This document shows, in pieces, positions 5,287-64,000 of a stretch of DNA of 64,000 nt (positions are counted from its first letter, which is position 1; the number at the start of each line of letters is the position of its first letter). This DNA is from Octopus sinensis (Eukaryota). Below the pieces are notes generated by a model, which saw only the letters and a program-made list of their open reading frames with translations, was not told the DNA's origin and did not search any database. Both the position numbers and the translations under genes were made by a program. The stretch spans positions 22,940,001-23,004,000 of the forward strand of contig NC_042999.1 in NCBI RefSeq assembly GCF_006345805.1. The letters are read 5' to 3'.

Positions 5287-5363
<77 letters not shown>

Positions 5364-5689
5364 GATAGATAGATAGATAGATAACTTTTTATTGTAGCCA
5401 CACAGGGCTAAACACAGAATAAAAATGGACGAAATACAATGTAGAATTTTTTCTTTTCGAGGTGGGATGGGTGGGGCAAGAAGAAAAAAAAAAAAAAAAA
5501 AAACGTTTGATCAATAGGGATTTGTGGGTTGTGTGGTGTATAAAAAAGCAATATATATATATATATATAAGGTTCACAGTTTAGGTGTAGTCTTGGAAAG
5601 AAAAACCTACAAAAAAGACCAAGGTCACCTCAGGCAATTCGAAAAAGAACACATGAGTAAGTCGCCTTACTTCTCGTTGTCTCTTTTGG

Positions 5690-8600
5690 TTACAGATTTA
5701 TGCTTAAAATAGTGTCGTCTTTCATACTGACCATTTTTGCCACTTTTACCCACTTTTTATTAAAACATTCGTTCGACAAAGCCTTCCTCTCTATTCTCAT
5801 CCTCCTTTTCAAGTGGTATTTGAAAAAGTTGACGAGAGACTGACCAGAGAGGAAGGTGTTTGTTTGCAGTCCTTTCAAACACGCGTCCACCACACATATT
5901 CTTTCGCCATAGCCATCAGCGTAACGAAAAACCGTTTTCCCTTCCCGTTTAAGGAAGGTGGTGGAACAATATTCACAATAGACTCGGCCGATAGGCGAGC
6001 CTGACCTACACGTGACAACAGCTGTTCGACGAAAACCACAGCTCTGAAATATCTGGACACTGCACGAGTGCGTGCAGAACGGTTTCGTCGCTCTGACCGC
6101 ATCTCGGGCAGGTCGGTCCGGTGATGGTTTTCGAACCGTGTCTGTAGCTCTTCTCTCGAACAGGTAGTGCGTCTCGATAGCACTGCCAAGCCAGGGATTT
6201 CTGGAAGTTATCCATAGGCCCCGGCCCGAACGTCGTCCTGAACAGGCGGGTTAGGAATTCCTCGTCGACGCCCAGGTTGCCCCGAGTGGTCGTCGGACCT
6301 CCCCTCCACTAGTCCTCTATAGAACGCTTTAGTCGTTTGGAAGTTGCACAAGTTTGACCCGGTCGGCAGAGCTGCTGTAGAGCTTGGCGACACTCTCGGT
6401 GCCAATCGCCCAGTTTCGGTCTCTTTTTGATCCACGTTTGCAGTTCGGTCAGTGAGACGAGCTGCGGGAGTCGCGCCTCACAAACGGCGCCCACACCTGT
6501 TCACCGTCGTCGATGAATTTCCAGAGATGTCGCAGTCTCAGCGCATGCCTGCGCATCATCAACCACGGCATGCCCAGTCCTCCATTCAACGGATGTTGAC
6601 AGCAAATGGACTTCCTCACCATCGGAACGCCACCCTTCCACAGGAAGCGGAAGAGTATGCGTTCCAGTTTGGTGATGGTGGAGTCGGGACAAGGTACGAC
6701 GGTCAGGCGGTAATCGATGACGGATGCGATGTACGCGTTCGCCACCTCCGCCCGGCCTTTTAGAGACAGCTTTCTCTCGGCCCATGTTTGGCTGAGAGCG
6801 ACCACTCTACTCGTGATCTCGTCCCAGTTTATCCATTTGGAGGTCCGGACTGAACCAGACCCCGAGCAATTTAACCGGTCCGTCCGTCCAGCGTCCCACT
6901 ACTGAGCCGCAGTCGGACGGCATGGGCTTGCTTCTCCAGGTGCCGAGTAGCAAACCCACTGACTTTTCCGGGTTAATCTTTGCTCCCGTCACCGTTTCAT
7001 ATTTTCTTAGTGTCTCGCCGACCAGCTCGATGTGCTGGTAGCTCGACACTATGACGGTGACATCGTCCGCATATGCCGACACGCTCGTCCCGCAACCCAG
7101 TTCCCGTGGGATGCCCCTCAGTGTCGCCAGCTTCCGCAGTAGCGGCTCGAGAGTCAATACATACAGAAGCGCCGACAGGGGACACCCTGACGGACCGAAC
7201 GCGTGATGTCAAACGGTTTAGACAGGTGACCGTTCACCCGAATCACCGATCGGATGCCGCTATACAAGGCAGCGATCCAACCGCGGAAGACGGGACCGAA
7301 GCCAGCCGCCCTGAGGACGGCCGCCAAGTACCGATGGTCGACCCTATCGAAGGCTTTAGACTGATCCAAATTTATCAGCGCCCCACCCATGCCAGGATCC
7401 TTAACTACCCTGTCCACAATGTAGCGCATCAGATGGAGGTTGTCATGTATGGTTCTGCCCGGCACGGCGCATGTTGCGCCCTGGTCGACCAGTTTACCAA
7501 TGACAAGCGCCAACCTCTCGGCTATTACTTTGGCCAAAAATTTCAAATCTGCGTTGAGCAGAGTGATGGGCCTGAAAATTATCTATAAAATTCCCCTTGT
7601 TTGAGTCTTTCTTCAGCAACGTCACTGCACCTCGGCTCACGAAACCGGGGATTCTCCCGTTTTGTTGCCAGTTGCAGTAGACTGATGCCAAGAGGTCGCC
7701 AAACAAGTCTGGCATTCGACAATACAGCTCGTAGGGTAAACCATCCAATCCAGGCGACTTATCCCTCGCGCAGCCCGCCATCGCATCCCACACGTCAGCG
7801 GCTGTGATGGGACTTTCACAACACTCCCTCTCTTGCCGAGAGCCGCGGCAGGTCGGTCAGGTAGGCACTGAAATCCATCCCTCGTTCCGACCCACCACTC
7901 GCACCAAACAGTCGAGCAAAGTGCTGTTGTAAGGCCTCACACATCCTTTCGTGTTCGAGTAAACTGCATCCCTGTTGATCTATTAGAGACCGAATGGTTG
8001 ATCTGTTGCCACGCTGCGCCTCCGCTACCCGGGCCTCTCGCGCAGCTTCAATCCCTTCGTTCCTTAAGGCACGCATTTTAGCTCTGACGACGCAACCTTC
8101 GTGCTTGGCGTTGGCAGCTAGCACGTTGGTTGCGCTGCCAGTGGTAAGTGCCTCTTCTAGTTTCTTAACTAAGTCTCCCTCTACTCTATTTCGTTCTATC
8201 GCTAATTCCTTGCTAAACCTAATTGATTCCGATTTTATTGCCATTTTCAGGGCGTACCACCAGCGGTTGTTAACGACCGCTCCCGTCAGCGCCCTCTTAA
8301 TTAACTCGCTAATCCGGTTCCTGTAAACCTGTCGCGCTAACAGCGACGTGTTCAGTTTCCAGTAACCGGGACCCTGCCTATGTGTTTTATCTAAGTCGAG
8401 CGTACACGTAACAAATTTGTGATCTGTGTAGCTGACTATTTTAAATTGTGGACATCCTACACTATCCCTATCCGCTGTCCTGCATAGAATTCTATCTAGA
8501 TAAGATCTCGACGATCCGACGCGGTTTGTCCAAGTCCACGTTGGCACGTTCGGATGGTCGAGTCGGAACCTGTCAGACAAATGGAAACGTCTGAGCAGGT

Positions 8601-9060
8601 CTTTGAGGCTCTTACACCCCCTTCTATTCCTATCCCTTCCCACATAATCTAGATGCGTGTCCAAGGTAGCGTTCCAATCCCCTACTAACAGTAAAGGTCT
8701 AGACGTACCCAGGAAAACCTCTAGACGTCTGAAGAAATCCGCCCGACCCGTTAAGGACGGTGCATAACTGCCATCAGAGGAATGCACACCCATTTCTGCC
8801 ATCCACGTCCAAGACAACCAGCCTACCCTCCGGGTCTAGGAATATTGCTCTTACTTTTACCTTTAGACTCTTTCGAAAAAGCACCGCAGTACCTCCACCA
8901 CCCATGTTCGGCAGACAGGGAGAAAAATAAATGTCAAATTGAGTCTGGTTTCGCTGATAGCTACTATATCCACGTCCAGTGACTTGATGTCGTTTAGAAG
9001 GTAACCTTGCTTCCAAGCCGACGCCAAGCCACGCGCATTCACACAACCTAATTTAAGCAT
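5690..9060 (-). pseudogene. Tx1 ORF2 (APE endonuclease + reverse transcriptase), several frameshifts
   Basis: MLKLGCVNARGL start at 9060, then AISET, LLVGDWNA, WTW...SYLDRI, TDHK, GPGYWKLNTSLL, KSPGLDGLPYELY, LDQSKAFDRVDH, VRQG, AYADDV, KINPEKS, GGLGMP and CPRCGQSDETVLHALVQC, spread across ORFs in different frames. Confidence 0.92.
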
Positions 9061-9099
9061 ACTTGACAATTACGAAAATTGTGTTTTACACACTATATT

Positions 9100-10969
9100 A
9101 GAAGAGACAAGAGGCAAGAAGTGAGGTCACTTACTCATTTTAAAGTTTCATTTTTTTCTTCTTCTTTTGTATCGTTTTTGATGAGGTGTTTGTATAGTTT
9201 TTCGACAGGTATCGTTGATACCCGCCTACCGCATTCGGAAATAATGTTTCAGTATGTGGTGTTGTGCTTGTGTTATGTGTAAAATTCTGATGTGTTTCGG
9301 TGGTGTGGTGTGCGGATGATTGTTTGTCTTAAAATCATCTCACAGACGACCATGTTAGATTTGATGTAGTCCATTAATTCTTTATTGTCTGTGTCTATTG
9401 CAGTTAGTTGGTGTGTGGTTTTACGGGTTCATTACTTTTTTGATTGTCTAGGGGAATGTTGTCCTGAGTGAGATATCTCCCTGCTTTAATTCCTTGTTTG
9501 GTGGATTTTTTGGATCTTTTCTTTTACCCCTGTGGCTATTTGCCATTCCGTCGAACTTTCGTCGTCCGAGGTATCAGTATGGGGTAGAGGAAAAAGAACA
9601 GGATCACTATGTATGCTTGTATAAATTGTTGATGTTTGTTTGTGCGGTGTTTGTGTTGTTGTGGTGTTAGGGGTAGCATTTGTCTTCTCGTCAGTGTTTC
9701 TGTCTTTTTATTGTCGTCCTGGGTGTGGGTGTGGGTCGATTTTTTGAAGATTCAACAAGTTTAATTGGTTGTGACGTCAACGGTGATTGTGTGTTGGTAC
9801 TGTTTTTCTTGGTGATGTTGTTGGGGTTTGTTTGTTTTCTTGGCGTTGTTCCATAATTGAGTGTGTTGGTGTTGGTGTTGGCAACAAAGGGATTTTATTG
9901 TTTTTCTTGATTGTTCTGTACCAGATCGCACTTGGCAATCAAATGTTCGGGGCTGCCACATTTGTAGCATCTAGGCTTTTTGCCTTCTGCCATAACATAT
10001 AGGCATTGCCCATTCTCCAAGTATATCTTGTCGGGTAGGCTCTCGATAGAGGCCCCCTCAATCTGGATGGTCACAACTACTGTTTTTCCACCCCAATTGT
10101 CGTTTAGGTACACGGCTGTTTCTAGAATATTGATCTTTTTCAAGTGGTAACAGATTGCCCCTGTATCCATTTGTTCGGCATATCGGGGGGTACATTTCTG
10201 ATAGTAATTCTACTCACCCTCTGGTTTTATAATAAGGGACCATGATGATTTCATCATTTCCCAGAGACTCAGTAGAGTGAGCTTTTGCCACTTCTGGTTA
10301 GGGAAGCGGACCACTACTGTGTTAAACTGGGGACCCCAGTTTATATACTCTTTTTCTTTCATATATTTTTTAAACATTTCTCCACATCAGTTTGTAATCT
10401 GTTCATTTGGTTTTTTGTTTTTTCTAATAATTTTATATACAATTGTCTTATTTTCTATTTCTTGTTTTATATGTTGAGGTGTATGCAGGACTAAATCTTG
10501 TCCACGGGTTGTAAAGAGAGCTCTTGTTTCTATGAGCTCTTCATTTGTGAATGTAACAATCCCTTTTTCTGGCGAAGAATATCTGCGAAATTTACTGTTG
10601 TTGACTTTTTTGTATTGGCATCTTCACTATTAGATAGTTCATTTTTATTGTGGTTGTGTGTTGCTGTTGTTTTTGTCAATAGTTTTCGTTTCAGTTTTAT
10701 TTTATCATTTATGTTGGTCGTGTGGTAGTGGTGGTGGTGGTGGTGGAGGTGGTGGTGGTAGCAGTTGTTGTCTCGTGGTTGCTGTTGTTAGTGGTGGTGG
10801 TGGCGTTGGTGACAGGGCTGTTAACGCACGTGGTTGCAGCGTTCCTTTCACCGAATTTCACGTTGGCATTTTCCGTGCGAACGTTCTTTTTTTTCTGTCG
10901 TTTCCAGACTAGGAAAATGTTGTTCCAAAAAAGAACGCGACCAGCGTTCAACAATAAATTTCTAGACAT
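9100..10969 (-). pseudogene. Tx1 ORF1 remnant (gag-like zinc knuckle)
   Basis: KPRCYKCGSPEHLIAKC (CX2CX4HX4C) in ORF 9895-10170, immediately upstream of ORF2. Stops and frameshifts present; boundaries approximate. Confidence 0.7.
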
Positions 10970-11171
10970 TTCTAATGTCGAGAAGAAAATAACAGAAATG
11001 AAATGGGGTCGAAACTGCCCTAGGGGCGAATTCCTCCCTTGGAAAAGCACTCAAATGAAAGTTGGTTGCCTTACACACCTATTTGCAAAAATCTACACAA
11101 AAATTGGCCTATAAATAGTCAAAATAAATGATACCTTCGGAGCTGAAACGACATCACATCCGTCAATAGAT

Positions 11172-11206
<35 letters not shown>

Positions 11207-11219
11207 GGCGGATAGATAT

Positions 11220-11264
<45 letters not shown>

Positions 11265-11286
11265 AGATAGATAGATAGATAGATAG

Positions 11287-11317
<31 letters not shown>

Positions 11318-11742
11318 AGATAGATAGATAGTAGATAGATAGATAGATAGAGATAGATAGATAGATAGATAGATGAAGATAGATAGATAGATAGATGATA
11401 GATAGATATAGATAGATAGATAGACGGATGGATGGTTAGTTGCGAAGTTTGATAAACCGAAGTCATTTTACAGTTTGAATAAGCAAGGCTTCGATGTAAC
11501 TGTCGAACTTTTCGATGTGAAAATAAAATATGCTGCTACACAGAAAGGTATTGAGAGTTATAACGTTTGGCTGTTCTTATATATATATAACTAAGCTTTA
11601 AAATAAATATTGATATATGGACGCGTGTCCTTGTGTGTGTATGCGCTTGTATGCGCGTGTATGCGTGCGTGTATGTGTCTGTGCGTATGGGTGTGTGTAT
11701 GTAAGTATGTATCTACACACGTATTCATACACCCCCACACAG

Positions 11743-17101: not shown

Positions 17102-18340
17102 TACGAGGGTGTGTAATTTATTAAAACAAAAGCAGGGATTGATCAATTACATCATTGTTCGACATAGTCTCCTTCCTTTTCGATACACTTCCATCGATCT
17201 ACAAACCTGCTTACTCCATCGGAGAAGAAGGTTTTCTGTCGATCGCGCGGCCATTTGTGCACCGCTCCTGTGCCTCTTCGCCTGCAGCAAATCGACGGCC
17301 TCATAAAGAATATTTGAGAGTTCCAAAGAGGTGAAAGTGTGAAGGAGCGAGTCCTAGACTGAATGCAGTGTTCGAACAACATGAAATCCAATTTTTCAAT
17401 GGTCTCAACGGTATGGACGATCGTAAGTCGGCGTGCATTGTCGTGCAACAACAACACTTGATTTGACAACAGACCGCTGCATTTGGTGCGAATTGCAGGT
17501 TTCAGTTTGTTGGCCACCATTTCACTGTAACTTACACTGGTGACTGTTAACTCCTTTTCTAGATCATGTTCGCCGGGCGAAATGCGTAGCATCACTTTTT
17601 TTTTCTGTGGATGGCTGGGTTTTGAATTTCCTTTTCGCTGGCGATTCCGGGTGTTTTCACTCCGTACTCTGCCTTTTGGATTCTAGTTCAAAGTGATGGA
17701 TACGGGCCTCATATCCTTTGACTATTCTCTCCAAAAATGCTGGTCTTTATCATTGTAGTGGTCGAGTAAGCGTTAACAGATCTCCACACGATTACGCTTA
17801 AGTGCTTCGATAAGCTTCCTTGGTATCCATCTCACACAGAGTTGTCGTGGATGGTTTCGTATGTAGAACCATGAATATTTTGCAGAGGACATGTCATCTA
17901 ATCGATTGTCACTTGTCGGTTCGCCAGAACCATCTCCCGAGCTTGTTGAATCTTCACCTCAGAGGTGGAGATTAATGGGCGTCCTGCTCCATCTCGTGCT
18001 TCACCTTTGTCTGTCCATTTTTAAACGTCTCGAACCACTCATGCTTCTACACGGTAGAGCTCTATACCCATATTGTATGGAAAACCTGCAATAAATTTCA
18101 GCCCTGACACACCTTCAGAGCCAGAGAAAACGGGTCGCTAATTTCAGTTCTTCCTTGGTGCACATGGCCAGCTGATCGACCATATTTACTCTGTAACATA
18201 AAAAAAAAAAAGAAATTTGGGCGATCAAGGTCCAGCCTCTGTTACATAACCACAAAAGTACCACTTTTTAGCACGCGGGCGCGGAAGGCAGGGCAGTCAA
18301 CCAAAAAGAAGTCTTTTGCAACATATAACGGGTATAAGCC
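17102..18340 (-). mobile_element. Mariner transposon, transposase pseudogene
   Basis: RFLW.EG..GAEI, WF..FKNG, GRP, LLHDNAR, decayed YSPDLAP and RW.KCIEKEGDYVE. One end begins tacgagggt after TA. Confidence 0.85.
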
Positions 18341-21616: not shown

Positions 21617-21850
21617 AAGGCGGCGAGCTGGCAGAAACGTTAGCACGCCGGGTGAAATGCGTAGCCGTATTTCGTCTGCCGTTGCGTTCTGAGTTCAAAT
21701 TCCGCCGAGGTCGACTTTGCCTTTCATCCTTTCGGGGTCGATAAATGAAGTACTAGTTACGCACTGGGGTCGATATAATCGACTTAATCCCTTTGTATGT
21801 CCTTGTTTGTCCCCTCTATGTTTAGCCCCTCGTAGGTAGTAAAGAAATAT
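21617..21850 (+). mobile_element. tRNA-derived SINE family S2, full length, with TSD
   Basis: ggcggcgagctggcag...gagttcaaattcc...tttagcccctcgtaggtagtaaagaaata. TSD atatattacgctggtgaa at 21601-21618 and 21851-21868. Confidence 0.9.
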
Positions 21851-21869: not shown

Positions 21870-23305
21870 TGGATCAATCGTTACAGAGGTGGCTAAAAGC
21901 TTTGGCAGGATAACACACGGTTTATGTTGCAGGGTTCGAATCCTGCCGAAATCAACTTTTCTTCTCGTCGCTCCAGGATCAATAAATTAAAGTACTGGTC
22001 TGGGGCGGTGGATTGCAAGGTTTGTTAGAGCTTCGTACAAAATATTTTGTGGCATTTGTATCGGATCTTTATGCTATGGGTTCGAATCCTGCCGAAATCA
22101 ACTTTTCATTTCGTCGTTCCAGGGTCAATAAATTAAAGTACTGGTCTGGGGCGGTGGGTTGCAAGGTTTGTTAGAGCTTCGTACAAAATATTTTGTGGCA
22201 TTTGTATCGGATCTTTATGCTATGAGTTCGAATCCTGCCGAAATCAACTTTTCATTTCGTCGTTCTAGGATCAATAAATTAAAGTACTGGTCTGGGGCGG
22301 TGGGTTGCAAGGTTTGTTAGAGCTTCGTACTAAATATTTTGTGGCATTTGTATCGGATCTTTATGCTATGAGTTCGAATCCTGCCGAAATCACTTTTCAT
22401 TTCGTCGTTCTAGGATCAATAAATTAAAGTACTGGTCTGGGGCGGTGGGTTGCAGGTTTGTTAGAGCTTCGTACAAAATATTTTGTGGCATTTGTATCGG
22501 ATCTTTATGCTATGAGTTCGAATCCTGCCGAAATCAACTTTTCATTTCGTCGTTCTAGGATCAATAAATTAAAGTACTGGTCTGGGGCGGTGGGTTGCAA
22601 GGTTTGTTAGAGCTTCGTACTAAATATTTTGTGGCATTTGTATCGGATCTTTATGCTATGAGTTCGAATCCTGCCGAAATCAACTTTTCATTTCGTCGTT
22701 CTAGGATCAATAAATTAAAGTACTGGTCTGGGGCGGTGGGTTGCAAGGTTTGTTAGAGCTTCGTACAAAATATTTTGTGGCATTTGTATCGGATCTTTAT
22801 GCTATGAGTTCGAATCCTGCCGAAATCAACTTTTCATTTCGTCGCTCCAGGGTCAATAAAATAAAGTACTGGTCTGGGGGCGGTGGGTTGCAAGGTTTGT
22901 TAGAGCTTCGTACAAAATATTTTGTGGCATTTGTATCGGATCTTTACGCTATGGGTTCGAATCCTGCCGAAATCAATTTCGCTTTTCGTCCTTCCGGGTT
23001 CGATAAAATAAAGTGCTGATCTAGGGCGGTGTATCAGAAGAGTTATTGGAACGTTGCACAAAATTTATTGTGATATTTGTATCGGATCTTTATGTTAAAA
23101 GGTCGAATCCGGCCGAACTCAATTTGGTCTTTCATCGTTCCGGACTCGATAAAATAAAGTACCAGTCAAGGGCGGTGGATTAGAAAGGTTGTTAAAGTAT
23201 CGTACAAAATGTTTCATGGTATTTGTATCGGATCTTTATGCTATGAGTTCGAATCTAGCAAAGGTCCCTAATGCATTTCGTTCTTTCGGGTTCGATAAAA
23301 TATAC
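21870..23305 (+). repeat. Tandem array of about 10 x 146-bp units derived from a tRNA-SINE head
   Basis: Unit boundaries at about 22001, 22147, 22293, 22438, 22583, 22729, 22875, 23022 and 23168. Each unit has a B-box-like gttcgaatcc. Confidence 0.93.
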
Positions 23306-24956: not shown

Positions 24957-26055
24957 ATATATATATAATATAATATAATATATATATATACATATATACA
25001 TGTATACATACATATATATATATACACGTGTTTGCGTGTGTGTGTGTAGGTTGGTATCTATTCCAGTAACAAAACAGAGAACGACTGGAAAGTCCGTTGT
25101 TGCATTGTTGCAGATCTGCTACATTAATTTTGATTAATGAGGCAGGCCACAGAAAGTGATTTTTCTACAGTCGTTGTTTTAAGACAGACTCTCAAGGTGA
25201 CCTCACTATTTCTTACGACTAATAAACATTCGATATAACGATATGGTAACGATTAAAAAAAATGCAAACTATCGTTTTCTTATTTAAAAGCAATCTTAGG
25301 TATTGTTGCACTCACATTTGAATGTCTAAATACAAAATTTGTACGTTGGTATGTGGTTAAGAAGCTCGCTTTTAAACTAAATGGTTTCGTGTTCAGTTCC
25401 ACTGCGTGGTAATTTAGGCTTATGTTTTCTATTATAGCCCAAGGCCCCACAGTACTTTTTGGGTGAATTAAGTATATATATATATATTATATATATATAT
25501 ATATTATATAATATATATATATATATTCTTTTATTTTTCAGCGGCCATGCTGGAGCACCGCATTTAGTCGAACAAATCGACCCCAAGACTTATTCTTTGT
25601 AAGCCTAGTGCTTATTCTACCGTTTTCTTTAGCCGAATTGCTAAGTTATGGGGACGTAAACACACGAACATCGGTTGTTAAGCGAGGGTGGGGGACAAAC
25701 ACAGACACACAAACATACACACGCGCACACACACACACGCACGCACATATATATAATATATATATATGTGTGTGTGTGTTTGTATTTATTTATAATGCGT
25801 GTGTGTCTTTGTATTTGTGCTTGTCCCCCACTACCAGTTGATAACCGGTGCTGGTTTGTTTATATCCCTGTCATAGCGGGTCGGCCAAGAGACCAAGAAT
25901 GGAAGTACTAGATTTCAAAAAAATAAAAAATAAATAAAAAATAAGTATTTGGGGCTATCTGTCCGACTAAACCTTTCATGGCGGTACTCCAGCGTGGCCA
26001 CAGGCTAATGTCTGAAACAAGTAAAAGAAGAAAGATTAAAGATATAGCACCTCAC

Positions 26056-30309: not shown

Positions 30310-30456
30310 TGTATGTATGTATGTATGTATGTATGTATGGATGGATGGATGGATGGATGGATGGATGGATGGGTGGGTGGATGGATGTATGTATGACAGA
30401 TAAATGGATAGACAGACAGATAGTACATAGATTAATGATAGACAGATAGATAGATA

Positions 30457-30970
30457 TGTTTCTTTATTAGCCACACAGGGCTGCACACAGATAGAACAAA
30501 TTACAAGGTAGAGCTTTTCTTTTGAAGGTATTAAAAAAAAAAAAAAAAAAAAAAGGAAGGGGGAGGTTCGATCAAAAGGGATCGTAAAAGGAGAGAAAGA
30601 GGACAAAAATAAGGGGGGTTAAAAAAAAAAAAAAGGGGGGGGGGGGAGGAAAAAAAATGATCAATAGGGATCGTTATCACAGAAATGTCAATATGAAGTG
30701 TAAAGGGGAGGACAGGTGAGGTTTACCCGTGGAAAGAAAAGCCTGCGGAAAAGACCACGGTAACCTCGGTCAATGAAGTCACATTTTATATTTCTTTTTT
30801 TTTTTTTTTTTTTTTTGCAAATAAGCAACTCTCTGTTTTCGATTTCTGGGTTCATAGGACTATGCTCAAGGTGGCTTCGTCATTCATACGTGCCATTCTT
30901 GCTACATTCACCCATCTTTTTTTAAAACATTCGCTAGACAAAACTTGCCTCTCTACTCTCACTTTCCTTA
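30457..30970 (-). mobile_element. 5'-truncated copy of a related Tx1 subfamily (end of ORF2 + 3' UTR)
   Basis: 30860-30965 aligns with 5700-5800. The 3' end gccctgtgtggctaataaag matches the 3' end of the long copy. Confidence 0.85.
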
Positions 30971-31005
30971 TAGATAGATAGATAGATAGATAGGTAGATA
31001 GATAA

Positions 31006-31097
<92 letters not shown>

Positions 31098-47768: not shown

Positions 47769-48791
47769 ATGTATCAAATATATTAAGAAAATATACCAAA
47801 ATATTGCATTCACAAAGAGATATTCTTCGAAATACCACACACACACACACACAATCTTTACAACCTCAATATTAGACCTTTTATAGAGAGCAATAAAATT
47901 TATTCATTTACGTTTGTTTATAAGTGTTTCTGTGTCTTTTTACGAATGTATTAGACAAAAACGTATTATATAATTATATAATTTATACATAATATATAAT
48001 TTTAGACAAGAATAAATAAATATATATATATATATAGTTTCTTTTTTGTCTGTTTATTTTCATTTTTTTTTTTTCGGTACGATAATGACAGAGTATATAT
48101 ACAAGAGGATGTTGTGTTTGTCAATAAAAGTATAAATTGGTAACAAGAAGAAGTAAAAAAAAAAAAAAAACAAAAATAAACAGAAAAAAATAATGAAGAA
48201 ATTTAACAATGAATTTACATCGTTATATTAACGCTGACTCGGTGCCGTCATATTGCGCCAAAATCGATGCGGTGTCAGGAATGATGGTAAAAATATGTCC
48301 CTGATGTTTCAAATAGCCTGAATGCGAGGTCACGCAAAAATAACAACAATGATAATAATCATACTATTCATAACAATAAAGATGATGAAAAAGAAGAAAA
48401 AAAAAATGAAGAAAAGAAAAAAACAACATAAATAACAACAACAACAACAACAGCAACAAACACGACTATAACAACAACTAAACCCACAAAAGACTTTGTC
48501 ACTTTTTACAATTTTTACTCCATTCTTGTACCCATCATTCGTCAATAAAAAATGCTGTTTTCCGAAATCTATGTGTTTTTTGAGTTATTATTATTATAAT
48601 TATTATTATTATTAACGGACAAAATGCTTAGCGGCATTTCGTCCGACCTTACATTCTGAGTTCAAATTCCGTCGAGGTCGACTTTGCTTTTCATCTTTTC
48701 GGGTTCGATAAATTAAGTACCAGCAGAATATAATCGACATTCCTCCTCCCAAAAAATATCAGGCTTTGTGCCTAAAGTAGGAAGGATTATG

Positions 48792-49460: not shown

Positions 49461-49524
<64 letters not shown>

Positions 49525-49774
49525 GGCAACAAGCTGACAGAATTGATAACACGCCAGAGAAAATGCTTTGCGGGATTTCGCTCGTCTACACGTTCTGAGT
49601 TCAAATTCTGCGGACAGCGACTTTGCCTTTCATCCTATTCGAGTTGATAAAATAAGTATTATTTGAGCACTGGGGTCGATGCAGTCCCTCTCCACAAATC
49701 GCAATCGACTAAATCCCTCCCCCCAAAATGCTGCCCTTGTGCCAAAATTTGAAACCATGATAACTTAATAACTG

Positions 49775-51589: not shown

Positions 51590-51867
51590 ATATATCACAC
51601 GCTCACGTGGTCGCACCAGTTGATCCTGTCATTTCTTATCACACACGAACTTCTCCACTGGACTTTCTACCTATCTACCCTTTACGGATTCTCTTTTTGA
51701 CATTTACATTCCGGCTGCACCTCTCCTACCTATGGATCACTGTGGACTCTACTATTATATCTAAACCAGTTATCTTGGTCTTATAAGCCTAGACTGTCAC
51801 ATTCCAGGAATTGTGGACAGATCGCTGTCATATAGCATTTTTCATATATGCTTATACTGCTCCTGAT

Positions 51868-52100
51868 AAGGCGGCGAGCTGGCAGAAACGTTAGCACGCC
51901 GGGCGAAATGCGTAGCCGTATTATGTCTGCCGTTACGTTCTGAGTTCAAATTCCGCCGAGGTCGACTTTGCCTTTCATCCTTTCGGGGTCGATAAATTAA
52001 GTACCAGTTACGCACTGGGGTCGATGTAATCGACTTAATCCGTTTGTCTGTCCTTGTTTGTCCCCTCTGTGTTTAGCCCCTTGTGGGTAGTAAAGAAATA
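51868..52100 (+). mobile_element. SINE family S2, full length, with TSD
   Basis: 15-bp TSD tatactgctcctgat at 51853-51867 and 52101-52115. Confidence 0.92.
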
Positions 52101-53570
52101 TATACTGCTCCTGATCCTTGTTCATGTCGAAGTTTGGATATGTAATCCGCTGAAAATGGCTGCGAACTCGATCATGACAATGAAGCATGGTTATGACTGG
52201 ACAACCGGAAATGATGTCGTTAAACATCTCACTGGTACTGGCTGCATAATTTACACTTGATGTTACTATTATCATTCCTTATGTCATGTTTATAATCGTT
52301 TGTCTTTAGGCATCGGAGTCTGAACCTGTGTTTCTGTTTTTATCCTAGATCTTTTAAGCCATTATTGACTCTCTCAATGGCTTGTTTTCCATCTATGGAA
52401 TCTTGCAGACTGCTTTTCCCCTTCAATTTTTCATTATATATTTTTTTAAATTTCGATTTGATCTTGACTGATTTTACGCTATTTTGTTATTTTGTCATTA
52501 TCTAAATATTTTTCTAAAATACCGTTAGTTTCTAAGGTTTCCTTATATGAAGAAATTTTACTTTTTTAACCCCTTTTTACCGCAATCAATTTCCCTTTTC
52601 TTGCAGCAAAGTATTTTTCTAGTCCTACTGTTGTTATTTTGTAGAACCTCTCTATTTGCATCAGGTCGCCCCAAACTCACCATTTGTTGTTTAGGCTGGT
52701 GACTTCGGAAAACTAGTTTCCTTATCTATTTTTTTTTTTTTTGTTTCACATTAGCTCTTTGACTCATCTGATTTTCAATTTATTATACTGAAGCTATAGT
52801 TTATACTGAGAATGACTATCATATTTATACTGATCATCTTATTTCTAGCGTTGAGCTGGCAGAATTGTTAGTCCAGTGGGAAAAATGCTTGGCGCAATTT
52901 TGTCCGTCTTTACATTTTGAGTTCAAATTCTGCCGCGGTCGGCTTATCCTTTCATTCTTTCGGGGTCAGTAAAATAAGTACCACTAGAGATATTGTTTTT
53001 CAGTTAATCAACCCTGAGTTACTAAGGTTTGTTTTCCTTATTTTGTAGTTTTCTATAATTGTCAGGGTCACAACAGCTACTCTATACAGCTGTAGTATTT
53101 TACAACCATACACCCTTTTTGCTCCTCAGGTGGCACTGCTTTCATTGGAAAGCAACCATCTCGTTCTACAATATGGATCTAAGGGCTCTGGCAAATATGT
53201 TATACTCTTTTAGGAGTCCCTAGTATTTTTGTTTTGGAGACTTAACATTATTTCCTCTCCGACATCCGAACAAGTATTGATTTTCGTTTGTTTCCAGTTC
53301 ATTGAATGCTACCACGTGTGTATTTATGCGTGTGTATTGGGTATTGGCCAAGTGATTCAGTTGGAAATTGGGGATTCTTCTTGTTGGTTGCAGTTCTTAA
53401 TATTTTGGTACGTTTCTTATCGATTAGTTCTCTTATGATTCCTTGCTGTTGGGTAGAATCTTTTGTTAATATACCTGCATGGGTTTGTGGGCAGACTTAT
53501 GTTTCTTTCCGTTTTGAAAAAACATAAATCCACCCAGAAGTTTTTTTCGTTTTGACAAAGCAGAGGAGGT
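52090..53570 (-). pseudogene. Heavily degraded RLE-type (R4-like) LINE remnant
   Basis: FGCRRG, KY*GLL, WLKRSRIKTET and KCKLC...IISGCP...HDRV motifs occur in the expected order, with many stops. Confidence 0.55.
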
Positions 53571-58533: not shown

Positions 58534-58768
58534 TATATATTTCTTTACTTCCCACAAGGGGCTAATCACAGAGGGGACAAACAAGGACAGACAAACGGAT
58601 TAAATCGATTACATCGACCCCAGTGCGTAACTGGTACTTAATTTATCGACCCCAAAAGGATGAAAGGCAAAGTCGACCTCGGCGGAATTTGAACTCAGAA
58701 CGTAACGGCAGACGAAATACGGCTTCGCATTTCGCCTGGCGTGCTAACGTTTCTGCCAGTTCGCCGCC
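58534..58768 (-). mobile_element. SINE family S2, full length, inserted in the gypsy relic
   Basis: TSD ttcctcgagt(c/t)tatata at 58517-58533 and 58769-58785. Confidence 0.9.
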
Positions 58769-59619
58769 TTCCTCGAGTTTATATAGCAGTTTAAATGTCT
58801 CGGAGTCGACATCAAAGGTTCCATACGGTCATCTAATTCTTACGATGACTTTTTTGTAATTATAGAGAAGTAATAAATACCCCACTTTGCGTCTGTGTTC
58901 AGATAAATCAGCTCCCATAACAATTCGCTATCTTCAAAATGTATTCTTCATGTCGGATGCTACAGTTTCAATCCACTTAGAGTGAGGGCCCCAATTTATA
59001 TCACGAGATTTTTATACTGTTTCTCCACATAACAATGGTTTCAGATTTCGGCACCAGGATGGAATAAGTTGATTATATCAATCCCAGTTCTTCACAGATA
59101 GTTATTTAATCAACCCCGAAAGGATAAAAGGCAAAGTCGACCTTGGCGAAATTTGAACTCAGAATGTAATGAGTCAGACGAAATACTACTAACGATTGTC
59201 AGCTCGCCTTTTTGGATAACAATAATATTCTTTTCTACTCTAGGCACAAGGCCCGAGATTTTTGGAGAGGGGGGGGCAGTCAATTAGATCGACCCCAGTA
59301 CACAACTGGTACTTAATTTATCGACCCCGAAAGGATGAAAGGCAAAGTCGACCCAGGTTGAATGGATAACATTAATATTATTCAAACTATAACACTAGAA
59401 TGGTAAATTCTAGTGGTGGACAGTCAAACAGAACGTCTTGATAGAACTCTGTGGAGAAGAATAACATTTTTACTTCGTTCGAGGAAGCAGTCAAATAAAC
59501 ATTCCAGTAATGTTTTAGAATGGCTTTCTGCGATTTCTCTCCTCGTTTTCACTGATTGATCAGGCACCGCATGAAAGACTAGCTTTCAGCGTCGTTCGAC
59601 ATCACAGTTATTACTTGCA

Positions 59620-59820
59620 GACGTAGGAGTGTCTGCGTGGTAAGTAGCTTGCTTACCAACCACATGGTTCCGGGTTCAGTCCCTCTGCGTGGCACCTTGG
59701 GCAAGTGTCTTCTAATATTGCCTCAGGCCGACCAAAGCCTTGTGAGTGTATTTGGTAGACGGAAACTGAAAGAAGCCCGTCGTATATATGTATATATGTA
59801 TATATATATATGGTGTGTGT

Positions 59821-59856
<36 letters not shown>

Positions 59857-60070
59857 TGCGCGCGTATGTTTGTATGTCTGTGTTTGTCCCACCAACATCG
59901 CTTGACAACTGATGCTGGTGTGTTTACATCCCCGTAACTTAGCGGCCCGGCAAAAGAATCCGATAGAAAAAGTACTAGGCTTACAAAGAATAATTCCTGG
60001 GGTCGATTTTCTCGACTATAAAAGCGGTGCTCCAGCATGGCCACAGTCAAATGACTCAAACAAGTAAAAA
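59620..60070 (+). mobile_element. SINE family S1, full length
   Basis: Same consensus. Confidence 0.87.
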
Positions 60071-60837: not shown

Positions 60838-61237
60838 GGCGCAGGAGTGGCTGTTTGGTAAGTAGCTTGCTAACCAACCACATGGTTTCCGGGTTCAGGT
60901 CCCACTGCGTGGCATCTTGGGCAAGTGTCTTCTGCTATAGCCCCCAGGCCGACCGATGCCTTGTGAGTGGATTTGGTAGACGGAACTGAAAGAAGCCTGT
61001 CGTATATATGTATATATATATAAGTGTGTGTGAATATGTTTGTGTGTCTGTGTTTGTTCCCCTAGCATTGCTTGACAACCGATGCTGGTGTGTTTACGTC
61101 CCTGTCACTTAGCGGCTCGGCAAAAGAGACCGATAGAATAAGTACTGGGCTTACAAAGAATAAGTCCCGGGGTCTATTTGCTCGACTAAAGGCGGTGCTC
61201 CAGCATGGCCGCAGTCAAATGACTGAAACAAGTAAAA
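60837..61237 (+). mobile_element. SINE family S1, full length
   Basis: Same consensus. Confidence 0.87.
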
Positions 61238-61467: not shown

Positions 61468-61835
61468 AGGCGCAGGAGTGGCTGTGTGGTAAGTAACTTG
61501 CTTACCAACCATATGGTTCCAGGTTCAGTCCCACTGCGTGGCACCTCGGGCCTACCAAAGCCTTGTGAGCGGATTTGGTAGACGGTAACTGAAAGAAACC
61601 TGTCGTATATATGTATATATGTTTGTGTTTGTGTGTCTGTGTTTGTCCCCCAACATCGCTTGACAACCGATGCTAGTGTGTTTACGTCCCCGTAACTTAG
61701 CGGTTCGGCAAAAGAAATCGATAGAATAAGTACTAGGCTTACAAAGAATAAGTTCAGGGGTCGATTTGCTCGACTAAAAGGCGGTGCTCCAGCATGGTCA
61801 TAGTCAAATGACTGAAACAAGTAAAAGAGTAAAAG
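61468..61835 (+). mobile_element. SINE family S1, full length
   Basis: Same consensus. Confidence 0.87.
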
Positions 61836-61837
61836 AG

Positions 61838-61869
<32 letters not shown>

Positions 61870-62919: not shown

Positions 62920-64000
62920 CATCGACTGTTCTACATACACCCGGAATTAAGAAGACCAAAGTGTGCAACACATCTTGTGTTTTGTGAGGAAACCTAACGT
63001 ACCGGGAATATCGGAGATTCGTGATATCCCCTCCAACGCAAAATTTCTAGAACGCATGTATTTAGCCCCAGTTTCGACGACTACAAGACGTACTCATCGT
63101 ATTTCTTTACTACCCACAAGGGGCTAAACATAGCGGGGACAAACAAGGACAGACAAAGGGATTAAGTCAATTACATCGACTCCAGTGCGTAACTGGTGCT
63201 TAATTTATTGACCCCGAAAGGATGAAAGACAAAGTCGACCTCGGCGGAATTTGAACTCAGACCGTGACGGCAGACGAAACACCGCTATTTCGCCCGGCAT
63301 GCTACCGTTTCTGCCAGCTCGCCGCCTTATACAAGACGTACTCATCTTCAGGTCTGATGGGATCGGTGCTTTTCCAGAAAGAATTAGGTCTAACGGTACA
63401 GATGATCATCCTGAATCCGGCAGATAAATTGACGGTTCTAAAGATGAATGACAGTAAAGGCAGCACCTTCAGACTTACGACTGTTTATGCACCCACCGGG
63501 GTAGGCCGGCCAGACTTATTTAGAGGTCTAGAAACCTTCCTAGAGACATCCTGTTCTTTAATACAAGCAGGGGATTGAAATGATATTTTGGACGCTCATG
63601 GGACTGTACAGGGTTAATCCATAGAAGGGGATACAATAGCCTCGAAAACATGCTCAGAGTTTTCAAATGCCTGACAGGCATCGACTGGATTTCCCGAATG
63701 TGCCAACGTGGATTTGGAGCAACTACAATAGATCTTACAGTTGATACTTAGCGAATTCGTTAGATTAACCGACAGAAATACTTTAGGGTGTCCACAATTT
63801 AAACTGGTCGGCTATACAGATCATAAATTTGTGATCTGCACAGTCCTTTAGAGATGATTCATAGACTAAGTCCCAGCTGCTGGAAGTTGAACGTCTACAG
63901 AGATTGGATTAGTGAGCTGGTCAAGAGGCATCTGACAGGAGCAACAGTCAACAAAAAGTGGTGGGGAGCCAAGAAGAGAGCCGTTAAATATGAGCCAATA
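62920..64000 (+). pseudogene. Degraded Tx1 ORF2 (APE region), interrupted by a SINE, runs off the window end
   Basis: ISEIR, SVLFQK, FRLTTVYAPTGVGRPDLFRGLETFL, AGD*N, YTDHKFVIC and WKLN are colinear with the APE of the 5.4-11.2 kb element. Confidence 0.8.
63099..63329 (-). mobile_element. SINE family S2, full length, inserted in the Tx1 relic
   Basis: 17-bp TSD tacaagacgtactcatc at 63082-63098 and 63330-63346. Confidence 0.92.

What the first reader, a model, noticed from the sequence alone, without database searches (positions are those of the whole stretch)
51853..52115. SINE family S2 shares its 3' tail with the Tx1 LINE: a SINE/Tx1 partnership
Seen: the S2 end tttgtcccctctgtgtttagccccttgtgggtagtaaagaaata aligns with both Tx1 3' ends, tttgttctatctgtgtgcagccctgtgtggctaataaagaaaca (30457-30500, reverse) and attctgtgtttagccctgtgtggctacaataaaaag (5384-5420, reverse). 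All four full S2 copies have 15-18 bp TSDs and no poly(A). Established: shared 3' tails mark LINE partners, and this is typical of CR1/L2/RTE rather than L1/Tx1. Inference: S2 is mobilised by a Tx1-clade RT that recognises a 3' structure. The body gcctttcatcctttcggggtcgataaa resembles the Meta central domain as I recall it (unverified).
Basis: partly seen in the sequence, partly recalled or inferred. Interest (0 to 1): 0.75.

Follow-up and report, generated by a model that had tools for sequence, protein, structure and literature searches.

The report
Octopod SINE with a borrowed LINE tail
A 233-bp parasitic repeat (SINE "S2") ends in the same ~35-50 bases as an L1/Tx1-like LINE in the same window, so it most likely copies itself using that LINE's enzyme; this is a familiar trick but with an unusual partner.

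Summary
S2 is a 233-bp SINE with four full copies in the window. Each is flanked by 15-17-bp target-site duplications and none has poly(A). Its last 35-52 nt find their best match in the S2-masked window at the 3' terminus of a LINE fragment (score 36-40; shuffle maxima 23-25, sd 2; 0 of 200 reach it). A second LINE 3' end ranks joint second.

The LINE encodes an ORF1 with one zinc knuckle and an ORF2 with APE endonuclease, reverse transcriptase and zf-RVT. Its closest solved structure is human L1 ORF2p (1e-51). Both copies sit inside (TATC)n microsatellites on both sides, which is the behaviour of microsatellite-targeting Tx1 elements. The "Tx1" label is therefore plausible, but I had no labelled Tx1 reference and ran no RT phylogeny.

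New evidence: homologous LINEs in Argonauta hians (53% protein identity) keep the same terminal GCCC.TGTGGCTAATAAAGAAA plus (TATC)n, while the rest of the 3' UTR has diverged. The S2 tail's top two hits in that locus are again those two LINE ends.

A shared stem-loop is not supported by folding. The "Meta domain" idea could not be tested. S2 copies are not in (TATC)n, so the true partner may be a sister subfamily. Verdict: a real SINE/LINE tail pair and a new variant of a known mechanism.

The parts
51868..52100 (+). S2 SINE copy a (233 bp): tRNA-like head with A/B-box-like motifs, conserved body, LINE-like tail
51853..51867 (+). 5' target-site duplication of copy a (TATACTGCTCCTGAT)
52101..52115 (+). 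3' target-site duplication of copy a
52049..52100 (+). S2 tail homologous to the LINE 3' terminus (core TCTGTGTTTAGCCCCTTGTGGGTAGTAAAGAAATA = 52066-52100)
21617..21849 (+). S2 copy b, 16-bp TSD ATATATTACGCTGGTG
58538..58770 (-). S2 copy c, 15-bp TSD with 1 mismatch, (TA)3 after the tail
63100..63328 (-). S2 copy d, 17-bp TSD GATGAGTACGTCTTGTA
5384..11168 (-). Near full-length L1/Tx1-like LINE, about 5.8 kb. ORF1 remnant with zf-CCHC at 9895-10170. ORF2 has APE + RVT_1 + zf-RVT and is broken into at least 8 pieces in three frames. No poly(A).
5384..5420 (-). 3' terminus of the 5.4-kb LINE (…TCTGTGTTTAGCCCTGTGTGGCTACAATAAAAAGT)
30463..30969 (-). 5'-truncated copy of a related LINE (3' UTR only)
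30457..30512 (-). 3' terminus of the 30.5-kb LINE (CCTTGTAATTTGTTCTATCTGTGTGCAGCCCTGTGTGGCTAATAAAGAAACA); best match of the S2 tail in the window
5290..5383 (-). (TATC)n array abutting the 3' end of the 5.4-kb LINE
11172..11393 (-). (TATC)n array abutting the 5' end of the 5.4-kb LINE
30973..31096 (-). (TATC)n array abutting the 5' end of the truncated LINE; a degenerate (TATC)n follows its 3' end at about 30400-30456

Best explanation
S2 is a 233-bp non-autonomous retroposon. Its 5' part carries A-box-like and B-box-like motifs, so I infer RNA polymerase III transcription. Its middle is a conserved SINE body shared with other SINE families in the window. Its last ~35-50 nt are homologous to the very 3' terminus of an L1-superfamily, Tx1-like LINE family that lacks poly(A) and lives inside (TATC)n microsatellites.

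The LINE's terminal ~26 nt (GCCC.TGTGGCTAATAAAGAAA) is held constant across octopod lineages. I take this as the signal its ORF2 protein needs to start reverse transcription. S2 carries a copy of that signal and is therefore reverse-transcribed and integrated in trans by the LINE's ORF2p, through target-primed reverse transcription at staggered nicks. This leaves 15-17-bp duplications. Priming is probably helped by pairing between the RNA end ...AAAUA(UA)n and a nicked ...TATA-3' target.

Shown: tail homology and its significance; co-terminal ends; TSDs; absence of poly(A); LINE domain content; microsatellite embedding; conservation of the LINE terminus in Argonauta.

Inferred: pol III transcription; recognition of the tail by ORF2p; trans-mobilisation; the role of microhomology.
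For: - Tail match is the top hit in the S2-masked window and beats all 200 shuffles. Pattern count is 5 against 0.00 expected.
- The match is co-terminal in the SINE and in two diverged LINE copies.
- In the Argonauta hians locus L002, the S2 tail's two best hits are again the two LINE 3' ends. They score 32-35 and 29; the next best hit scores 20-22; 0-1 of 200 shuffles reach the top score.
- The terminal 26 columns of the LINE 3' UTR are 58-81% identical between window and Argonauta copies, against 24-32% upstream. This is the most conserved 26-nt window of the alignment, although the ORF2 proteins are only 53% identical.
- S2 has clean TSDs of 15, 16, 15 (1 mismatch) and 17 bp and no poly(A), as expected for APE-type LINE integration.
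- Other SINEs in the window share S2's head and body but carry other tails. The tail is therefore an exchangeable module.
- The LINE is L1-type: L1 ORF2p 1e-51 over residues 7-851; the intact relative P0002 gives 5e-68, with no R1/TRAS1 endonuclease hit at E<=1. It has APE, RVT_1 and zf-RVT, and an ORF1 with zf-CCHC.
- Published SINE/LINE tail homologies are 35-61 bp at 72-95% identity (PMC11481361). This pair falls in that range.
Against: - Identity of S2 to the two LINE tails in the window is only 77% (34/44) and 88% (21/24), so neither copy is the source.
- Both LINE copies here are dead. ORF2 is split into at least 8 pieces.
- All LINE copies seen abut (TATC)n, yet none of the five S2 copies does. 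If the endonuclease alone dictated microsatellite targeting, S2 should land there too.
- S2 ends in (TA)n, not (TATC)n, whereas classical stringent pairs share the terminal repeat.
- No species-wide LINE library could be searched, so a better-matching LINE cannot be excluded.
- A shared hairpin is not statistically supported.
- Only 4+1 S2 copies and 2+2 LINE ends were available.
Confidence: 0.65

Rival explanations
1. The tail is homologous, but the real driver is a different LINE carrying the same terminal module. It would be a sister subfamily without microsatellite targeting, or a LINE of another clade that exchanged 3' ends.
For: S2 copies are never in (TATC)n, while every LINE copy is. 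Identity to the LINE tails in the window is only 77-88%. In the last 23 nt, the S2 tail is as close or closer to the Argonauta LINE end (20/23, loop CTTGT identical) than to the window copies, which hints at unsampled family members. O. vulgaris is reported to hold 13 recently active L1-Tx1 families (PMC13282606).
Against: Every LINE end that carries the motif (4 of 4, in two genera) belongs to the same ORF2 family. No other LINE with coding capacity is present in the window for comparison.
Confidence: 0.2
2. The sequence moved the other way. The LINE copies acquired an S2-derived 3' end by template switching or by a nested insertion, so the similarity says nothing about who mobilises S2.
For: SINE and LINE modules are known to recombine (PMC5786205, PMC4824008). 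S2 itself is a mosaic: the segment just 5' of the tail is shared with the S1 SINE body.
Against: The motif is the terminal, most conserved block of the LINE 3' UTR in both the window and Argonauta hians. No S2 was detected in the 21-kb Argonauta locus. Only the last ~35-50 nt are shared, with no SINE head or body and no TSD inside the LINE.
Confidence: 0.07
3. The match is a chance or compositional resemblance between two T/G-rich ends that each carry an AATAAA-like signal.
For: The region is T/G-rich. Part of the S2 3' region (GTTTGTCTGTCCTTGTTTGTCCCC) also matches an unrelated SINE body at score 33.
Against: 0 of 200 dinucleotide-preserving shuffles reach the observed score, at all three query lengths. 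The result is replicated in a second genome. The ends are co-terminal. The 24-nt pattern is expected 0.00 times.
Confidence: 0.03

Closest known systems
UnaSINE1/UnaL2 (eel) and other 'stringent' SINE/LINE pairs (CR1, L2, RTE partners)
   Same: The SINE's last tens of nucleotides copy the partner LINE's 3' end. There is no dependence on poly(A). Size and identity of the shared block are within the published range (35-61 bp, 72-95%; PMC11481361, PMC4824008).
   Different: The partner here is an L1-superfamily, Tx1-like LINE. No convincing conserved stem-loop was found. The SINE and the LINE do not share the terminal simple repeat: (TA)n against (TATC)n.
ZmSINE2/3 with LINE1-1_ZM (maize/sorghum) and SINEX-3_CR with L1-1_CR (Chlamydomonas): stringent pairs inside the L1 clade (Ohshima 2012, PMC3472496)
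   Same: An L1-group LINE with a conserved, specific 3' end that is shared with a SINE. This argues for sequence-specific template recognition inside the L1 group.
   Different: Those pairs are in plants and algae. The plant case has a well-supported stem-loop with compensatory changes, and the algal pair ends in poly(A). Here the host is an animal, there is no poly(A), the structure is weak, and the LINE is microsatellite-associated.
SINEU mobilised by Tx1-Mar in crocodilians (Kojima 2015, PMC4494074)
   Same: A SINE family attributed to a Tx1-clade partner.
   Different: That attribution rests on a shared insertion target (Mariner-N4_AMi) and shared snRNA-derived 5' ends. SINEU has poly(A) tails, and no LINE sharing its 3' terminus was found. 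Here the evidence is the reverse: a shared 3' terminus and no shared target.
Kibi, Koshi and crocodilian Tx1 families that insert into (TC)n, (TTC)n, (TTCC)n or (TTTC)n microsatellites (PMC4494074)
   Same: An APE-type, L1-group LINE found with the same microsatellite on both flanks, in full-length and in 5'-truncated copies.
   Different: The repeat unit is (TATC)n. I did not find this unit listed as a target in the papers read. Phylogenetic proximity to Kibi/Koshi was not tested.

Membership tests
SINE (short, non-autonomous, LINE-dependent retroposon) | Short (<700 bp), multicopy, no coding capacity, flanked by TSDs | tested here: met
   Four copies of 229-233 bp at 91-96% identity to copy a, with TSDs of 15-17 bp. 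One more copy is in an unrelated contig, L005.
SINE (short, non-autonomous, LINE-dependent retroposon) | Head derived from a pol III RNA (tRNA/7SL/5S) with an internal promoter | tested here: inconclusive
   ARAGORN finds no tRNA in the window. Rfam finds nothing, even at E<=10 on the element alone. By eye, a B-box-like GAGTTCAAATTCC and an A-box-like TGGCAGAAACG are present.
SINE/LINE pair with shared 3' tail ('stringent' type) | Significant, co-terminal similarity between the SINE 3' end and a LINE 3' end from the same genome | tested here: met
   replicated on Argonauta LINE ends.
SINE/LINE pair with shared 3' tail ('stringent' type) | LINE 3' end conserved within the LINE family (functional constraint) | tested here: met
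   The terminal 26 nt are 58-81% identical between genera, against 24-32% upstream.
SINE/LINE pair with shared 3' tail ('stringent' type) | Conserved stem-loop in the shared tail | tested here: inconclusive
   A 3-4-bp GC hairpin can be drawn in all tails. Folding z-scores are -0.05 to -0.34. RNAalifold gives -2.09 kcal/mol with 0 compensatory pairs. One apparent G-C to C-G swap between the Argonauta LINE and S2 depends on the chosen register.
SINE/LINE pair with shared 3' tail ('stringent' type) | Tail-dependent trans-mobilisation by the LINE protein | not testable with these tools
   Needs a retrotransposition assay.
L1 superfamily LINE (L1/Tx1 group) | ORF2 with N-terminal APE endonuclease, RT and C-terminal Cys-His motif; closest to L1 ORF2p | tested here: met
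   Pfam Exo_endo_phos, RVT_1 and zf-RVT. PDB best hit is L1 ORF2p at 1e-51 over residues 7-851, against R2 at 1e-21. The relative P0002 gives 5e-68, with L1-EN at about 1e-13 and no R1-clade EN hit at E<=1.
Tx1 clade | Placement with Tx1 references in an RT-domain phylogeny (RTclass1) | not tested
   No labelled Tx1 sequence could be obtained. Database hits carry no useful names.
Tx1 clade | Target-specific insertion (multicopy genes, transposons or microsatellites) | tested here: met
   Both window copies have (TATC)n on both flanks, in the same orientation. Such arrays cover about 2.7% of the window. Argonauta copies are also followed by (TATC)n. Among APE-type LINEs, only the Tx1 and R1 clades are said to hold site-specific members (PMC6007223). 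The sample is small (2 independent copies).
Tx1 clade | Type-I-like ORF1 (RRM and/or CCHC knuckle) rather than Transposase_22 | tested here: met
   zf-CCHC in the window ORF1 remnant and in the ORF1 of relatives in L003 and L004; no Transposase_22. Described as consistent with Tx1 in PMC5203782. An RRM was not detected.
MetaSINE superfamily | 66-bp Meta-domain directly after the tRNA-derived head (61-86% identity to consensus; PMC4824008) | not testable with these tools
Published annotation labels octopus SINEs tRNA-Core and tRNA-Deu (PMC8967140).

The most novel reading that the evidence does not exclude
An animal Tx1-type (L1-superfamily) LINE family that lives in (TATC)n microsatellites starts reverse transcription from a specific, poly(A)-less ~26-nt 3' terminal sequence conserved across octopods. 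A tRNA-like SINE has copied that terminus and is spread genome-wide by the same enzyme, free of the microsatellite restriction.

Among the papers I could search, this would be the first SINE/Tx1 pair defined by a shared 3' tail. It would also be an animal counterpart to the 'ancestrally stringent L1' idea so far based on plants and algae.
Probability: 0.45. Interest if true: 0.65.

Novelty: new variant of a known kind. Interest (0 to 1): 0.5.

Why it matters
SINEs are reported to make up about 40% of repeat content in octopus genomes (PMC8967140), and about 11.6% of the O. vulgaris genome (PMC13282606). Most of them are 'unclassified' with no known driver. Assigning one family to an L1/Tx1-type partner would help explain their expansion.

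It would also extend sequence-specific ('stringent') template recognition to the animal branch of the L1 group, where poly(A)-based, relaxed recognition is the textbook model.

Finally, it gives a natural experiment on what sets target choice. The LINE sits in (TATC)n and its presumed passenger does not. This separates the contribution of the endonuclease from that of RNA-target pairing.

Tried and rejected
- Clade naming by database annotation. Two protein searches (single sequence and an 18-sequence profile) and a cluster look-up returned essentially no informative names. Tx1 versus other L1 lineages could not be settled this way.
- More S2 and LINE copies from public data:
  - The exact-pattern scan of metagenome contigs found nothing.
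  - A search with the S2 reverse-frame peptide found one 543-bp contig.
  - The window's own LINE ORF is not on record.
  - The 72%-identical relative L001 ends before the 3' UTR tail.
- tRNA origin of the head: ARAGORN and Rfam were negative.
- Meta, Nin-DC or Deu identity of the body: no reference sequences in held papers or supplements.
- Shared stem-loop: single-sequence and alignment folds are not better than chance, so I dropped it as evidence.
- Distant LINE relatives (42% identity; L003, L004) end without poly(A) in ...CCTTGTGCCTTCTGTGTA..CAGAAATAAAGCAG, with two strong hairpins (z about -3). The words they share with the octopod tail (CCTTGT, TCTGTGT, AATAAAG) occur in a different arrangement. 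I did not count this as homology.
- R1-clade membership was rejected: the alternative site-specific APE clade gives no R1/TRAS1 endonuclease hit at E<=1, while L1-EN hits reach 1e-13.
Full report
**What is at the coordinates.**
The finding's span, 51853-52115, is one copy of a 233-bp repeat (51868-52100, + strand). It is bracketed by a perfect 15-bp direct repeat, TATACTGCTCCTGAT (exact ends).

A BLAST of this copy against the window finds three more full-length copies:
- 21617-21849 (+)
- 58770-58538 (-)
- 63328-63100 (-)

These are 91-96% identical to the first copy. A four-way alignment shows that similarity starts at AAGGCGGCGAGCTGG and stops at GTAAAGAAATA in every copy. Each copy has its own flanking duplication: 16 bp, 15 bp with one mismatch, and 17 bp. 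There is no A-run at the 3' end. The element ends in ...AAGAAATA, followed by zero to three extra TA units and then the duplication. Three of the four duplications begin TATA or ATATA.

**Is the tail match real?**
I masked the four S2 copies and scanned the whole window on both strands with the last 70 nt of the S2 consensus.
- The best local alignment falls on 30457-30512 (-), score 40.
- The 5384-5420 (-) end ties for second place at score 33.

I repeated the scan with the last 35, 44 and 52 nt. The observed scores were 36, 39 and 40. For 200 dinucleotide-preserving shuffles of each query, the window-wide maxima averaged 22.9-24.7 (sd 2.0-2.4, largest 33). None reached the observed value.

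One degenerate 24-nt pattern covers all three tails. It occurs five times in the window, on the two LINE ends and three S2 copies, against 0.00 expected.

The alignment is also co-terminal.

One qualification applies. The other score-33 hits are to GTTTGTGTGTCTGTGTTTGTCCCC, an internal segment of a different, abundant SINE that I call S1. So the part of S2 just upstream of TCTGTGT is shared SINE body. The securely LINE-like part is the last ~35 nt.

**What the LINE is.**
The 5.4-kb end belongs to an element of about 5.8 kb (5384 to about 11168, minus strand).
- It has an ORF1 remnant with a CCHC zinc knuckle (9895-10170).
- Its ORF2 is broken into at least eight pieces in three frames.
- ORF2 carries an apurinic-type endonuclease, a reverse transcriptase and a C-terminal zf-RVT zinc motif.

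I stitched the pieces into one ORF2 sequence and compared it with solved structures. It aligns end to end (residues 7-851) with human LINE-1 ORF2p at E 1e-51. R2 proteins reach only 1e-21, over the RT alone.

An intact relative, P0002, gives 5e-68 to L1 ORF2p and about 1e-13 to L1 endonuclease structures. It gives no hit to R1-clade endonucleases even at E<=1.

The second LINE copy (30463-30969) is a 5'-truncated 3' UTR, 69-78% identical to the first. No other LINE with coding capacity is in the window.

The closest proteins in public data are:
- an unnamed NCBI assembly contig, 72% identical (P0001);
- a protein of Argonauta hians, 53% identical (P0013);
- a family at about 42% identity from an ENA assembly.

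From this I infer that the window comes from an octopod cephalopod.

**Is it Tx1?**
I could not test this directly. No labelled Tx1 sequence was reachable, and the database hits carry no useful names. Three indirect criteria point to Tx1.

1. Target specificity.
   - Both LINE copies are embedded in (TATC)n on both sides, in the same orientation.
   - The full-length copy has arrays at 11172-11393 and 5290-5383.
   - The truncated copy has an array at 30973-31096 and a degenerate array 3' of 30457.
   - Such arrays cover about 2.7% of the window, and other (TATC)n arrays in the window carry no LINE.
   - Two independent insertions both landing in such arrays is unlikely by chance, roughly 7e-4 by my estimate.
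   - Microsatellite-specific families (Kibi, Koshi and several crocodilian families) are a known branch of Tx1 (PMC4494074).
   - Among LINEs with APE-type endonucleases, only Tx1 and R1 are said to contain site-specific members (PMC6007223). R1 is excluded.
2. ORF1 type. ORF1 has a single CCHC knuckle and no Transposase_22 domain, here and in the 42%-identity relatives. This has been described as consistent with Tx1 (PMC5203782).
3. Published annotation. Repeat annotations of octopus genomes list L1-Tx1 as the L1-type component, including 13 recently active families in O. vulgaris (PMC13282606, PMC8967140).

I rate the Tx1 label at about 0.7. 'L1 superfamily' is secure.

**New evidence from a second genus.**
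The Argonauta hians locus L002 holds two copies of the homologous LINE. Their 3' ends read:
- ...CTTGCGCCCATGTGGCTAATAAAGAAATC(TATC)n
- ...CTTGCGCCCTTGTGGCTAATAAAGAAACA(TATC)n

.

I aligned the four LINE 3' UTRs. Between genera, the last 26 columns are 58-81% identical. Everything upstream is 24-32% identical. The terminal block is the best-conserved 26-nt window in the alignment.

I then scanned L002 with the S2 tail. The two LINE ends are the top two hits, scoring 32-35 and 29. The next best hit scores 20-22, and 0-1 of 200 shuffles reach the top score. Over the last 23 nt, S2 matches the second Argonauta end at 20/23.

So the shared block is the conserved functional end of this LINE family, and the S2 match is to that block. 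This argues against chance. It also argues against the idea that the LINE copies picked the sequence up from S2.

The two Argonauta copies share their downstream flank, so they are not independent insertions.

**Structure.**
A small hairpin can be drawn in all tails:
- AGCC/GGCU with loop CUGUGU in the window LINEs;
- GCC/GGC with loop CUUGU or CAUGU in Argonauta;
- GCCC/GGGU with loop CUUGU in S2.

But the minimum free energies are not better than shuffles (z -0.05 to -0.34 for the consensus tails). RNAalifold gives -2.09 kcal/mol with no compensatory pair. One G-C to C-G exchange between the Argonauta LINE and S2 looks compensatory, but this depends on the register chosen in a run of G and C.

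I treat the hairpin as unproven. The evidence favours conservation of primary sequence. That sequence includes an AAUAAA-like element at the very end.

**Mechanism proposed.**
Steps shown by the sequence:
- S2 shares the LINE's conserved terminus.
- S2 integrates with 15-17-bp staggered-cut duplications.
- Neither element uses poly(A).

Steps inferred:
- S2 RNA is made by pol III. I infer this from A-box-like and B-box-like motifs seen by eye. ARAGORN and Rfam do not recognise a tRNA in the head.
- The terminal ~26-nt element is bound by the LINE ORF2p, and reverse transcription starts there, as in published 'stringent' pairs.
- Priming is helped by microhomology. After nicking, the primer would end in ...TATA-3' at three of the four S2 sites and in ...GATA-3' at the LINE sites. 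These match RNA ends ...AUA(UA)n and (UAUC)n respectively.

This would also explain the main inconsistency, that S2 is never in (TATC)n while the LINE always is. The LINE's targeting would have to depend partly on pairing of a (UAUC)n read-through with the target, not only on the endonuclease. That is speculation, and with four S2 sites it cannot be tested here. The alternative is that a sister subfamily without microsatellite targeting drives S2. I keep this as the main rival (0.2).

**Comparison with what is known.**
- SINEs sharing 3' tails with LINEs are long established. A survey listed 58 pairs, dominated by CR1 and RTE (PMC3747384, PMC3472496).
- Within the L1 group, stringent pairs were reported for maize/sorghum and Chlamydomonas (PMC3472496).
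- The one SINE family attributed to Tx1 that I found, crocodilian SINEU, was assigned by shared insertion target. It has poly(A) tails and no LINE sharing its 3' terminus (PMC4494074).
- For mollusc SINEs, reported partners are CR1, CR1-Zenon, L2 and Nimb (PMC4824008, PMC11481361). Most octopus SINEs are unclassified (PMC13282606).

I found no report of a SINE sharing a non-poly(A) tail with a Tx1-type LINE. However, my search covers only open-access text and not Repbase or Dfam. I therefore call this a new variant of a known kind, not a new kind.

**The Meta-domain remark.**
This could not be tested. Published annotation of octopus SINEs uses tRNA-Core and tRNA-Deu (PMC8967140). My own recollection, unverified, is that the motif TCGGGGTCGATAAA.TAAGTACCAG resembles the Nin-DC/Deu type rather than Meta.

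**Limits.**
- Only 4+1 S2 copies and 2+2 LINE ends were available.
- There was no species repeat library, no RT phylogeny and no experiment.

The homology claim is strong (about 0.85-0.9). The mobilisation claim is moderate (0.65). The Tx1 label is moderate (about 0.7).

Noticed in passing
window 21934-23255: A tandem array of 146 bp x 9.1 copies (91% matches). Its unit looks like a SINE monomer: a B-box-like GTTCGAATCC, the ...TCAATAAATTAAAGTAC body motif, and what looks like head sequence. It lies directly 3' of S2 copy b, so it appears to be a SINE-derived satellite.
   Followed up: partly
window 48616-48790 and 49522-49770: Another SINE family ('S3') has an S2-like head and body but a different tail (...GGCTTTGTGCCTAAAGTAGGAAGGATTATG / ...GCCCTTGTGCCAAAATTTGAAACCATGATAA). 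The first copy has (ATT)n on both sides; the second has (ATT)n 5' and a (CTA)n run 3'. This suggests a second, microsatellite-targeting partner; Dong/R4-type LINEs insert in (TAA)n. It also shows tail swapping between SINE families.
   Followed up: partly
window e.g. 61468-61850; also near 59600-60000, 61000-61200 and 25400-25800 (-): An abundant SINE ('S1'). By eye its head and body look tRNA-like and CORE-like. It ends in ...AAGTAAAAGAGTAAAAGAGTA(TA)n. Its internal GTTTGTGTGTCTGTGTTTGTCCCC is shared with S2 just upstream of the LINE-like tail. Its AGTAAAAGA...(TA)n ending faintly resembles the S2 end.
   Followed up: partly
window 5290-5383, 11172-11393, 30973-31096; L002 12790-12805 and 18859-18914: The L1/Tx1-like LINE is always next to (TATC)n: both flanks in the window, and the 3' flank in Argonauta. 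This is a candidate (TATC)n-specific LINE. I did not see this target unit among the microsatellite targets named in the papers read.
   Followed up: yes
window 17152-17595 (-): A 147-aa ORF that looks to me like a mariner-type transposase remnant (...LLLHDNARRLT...). It was not checked against any library.
   Followed up: no
L003 1-14307: In an ENA assembly (ERZ21867824), LINE relatives at 42% identity sit head to tail. One element's end, ...AAATAAAGCAG, runs into what looks like the next element's 5' UTR. They lack poly(A) and end in two strong hairpins (z about -3).
   Followed up: partly
window 63621-63892 (+): A third fragment of a related LINE, 70% identical to ORF2 positions 2554-2831 of the 5.4-kb copy. 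It lies next to S2 copy d, near the end of the window.
   Followed up: no
window-wide: The window is very rich in tetranucleotide microsatellites. Perfect runs of at least 5 units: 32 of the AGAT/TATC class and 14 of the ACAT class. There are also long (TA)n and (TG)n tracts.
   Followed up: partly
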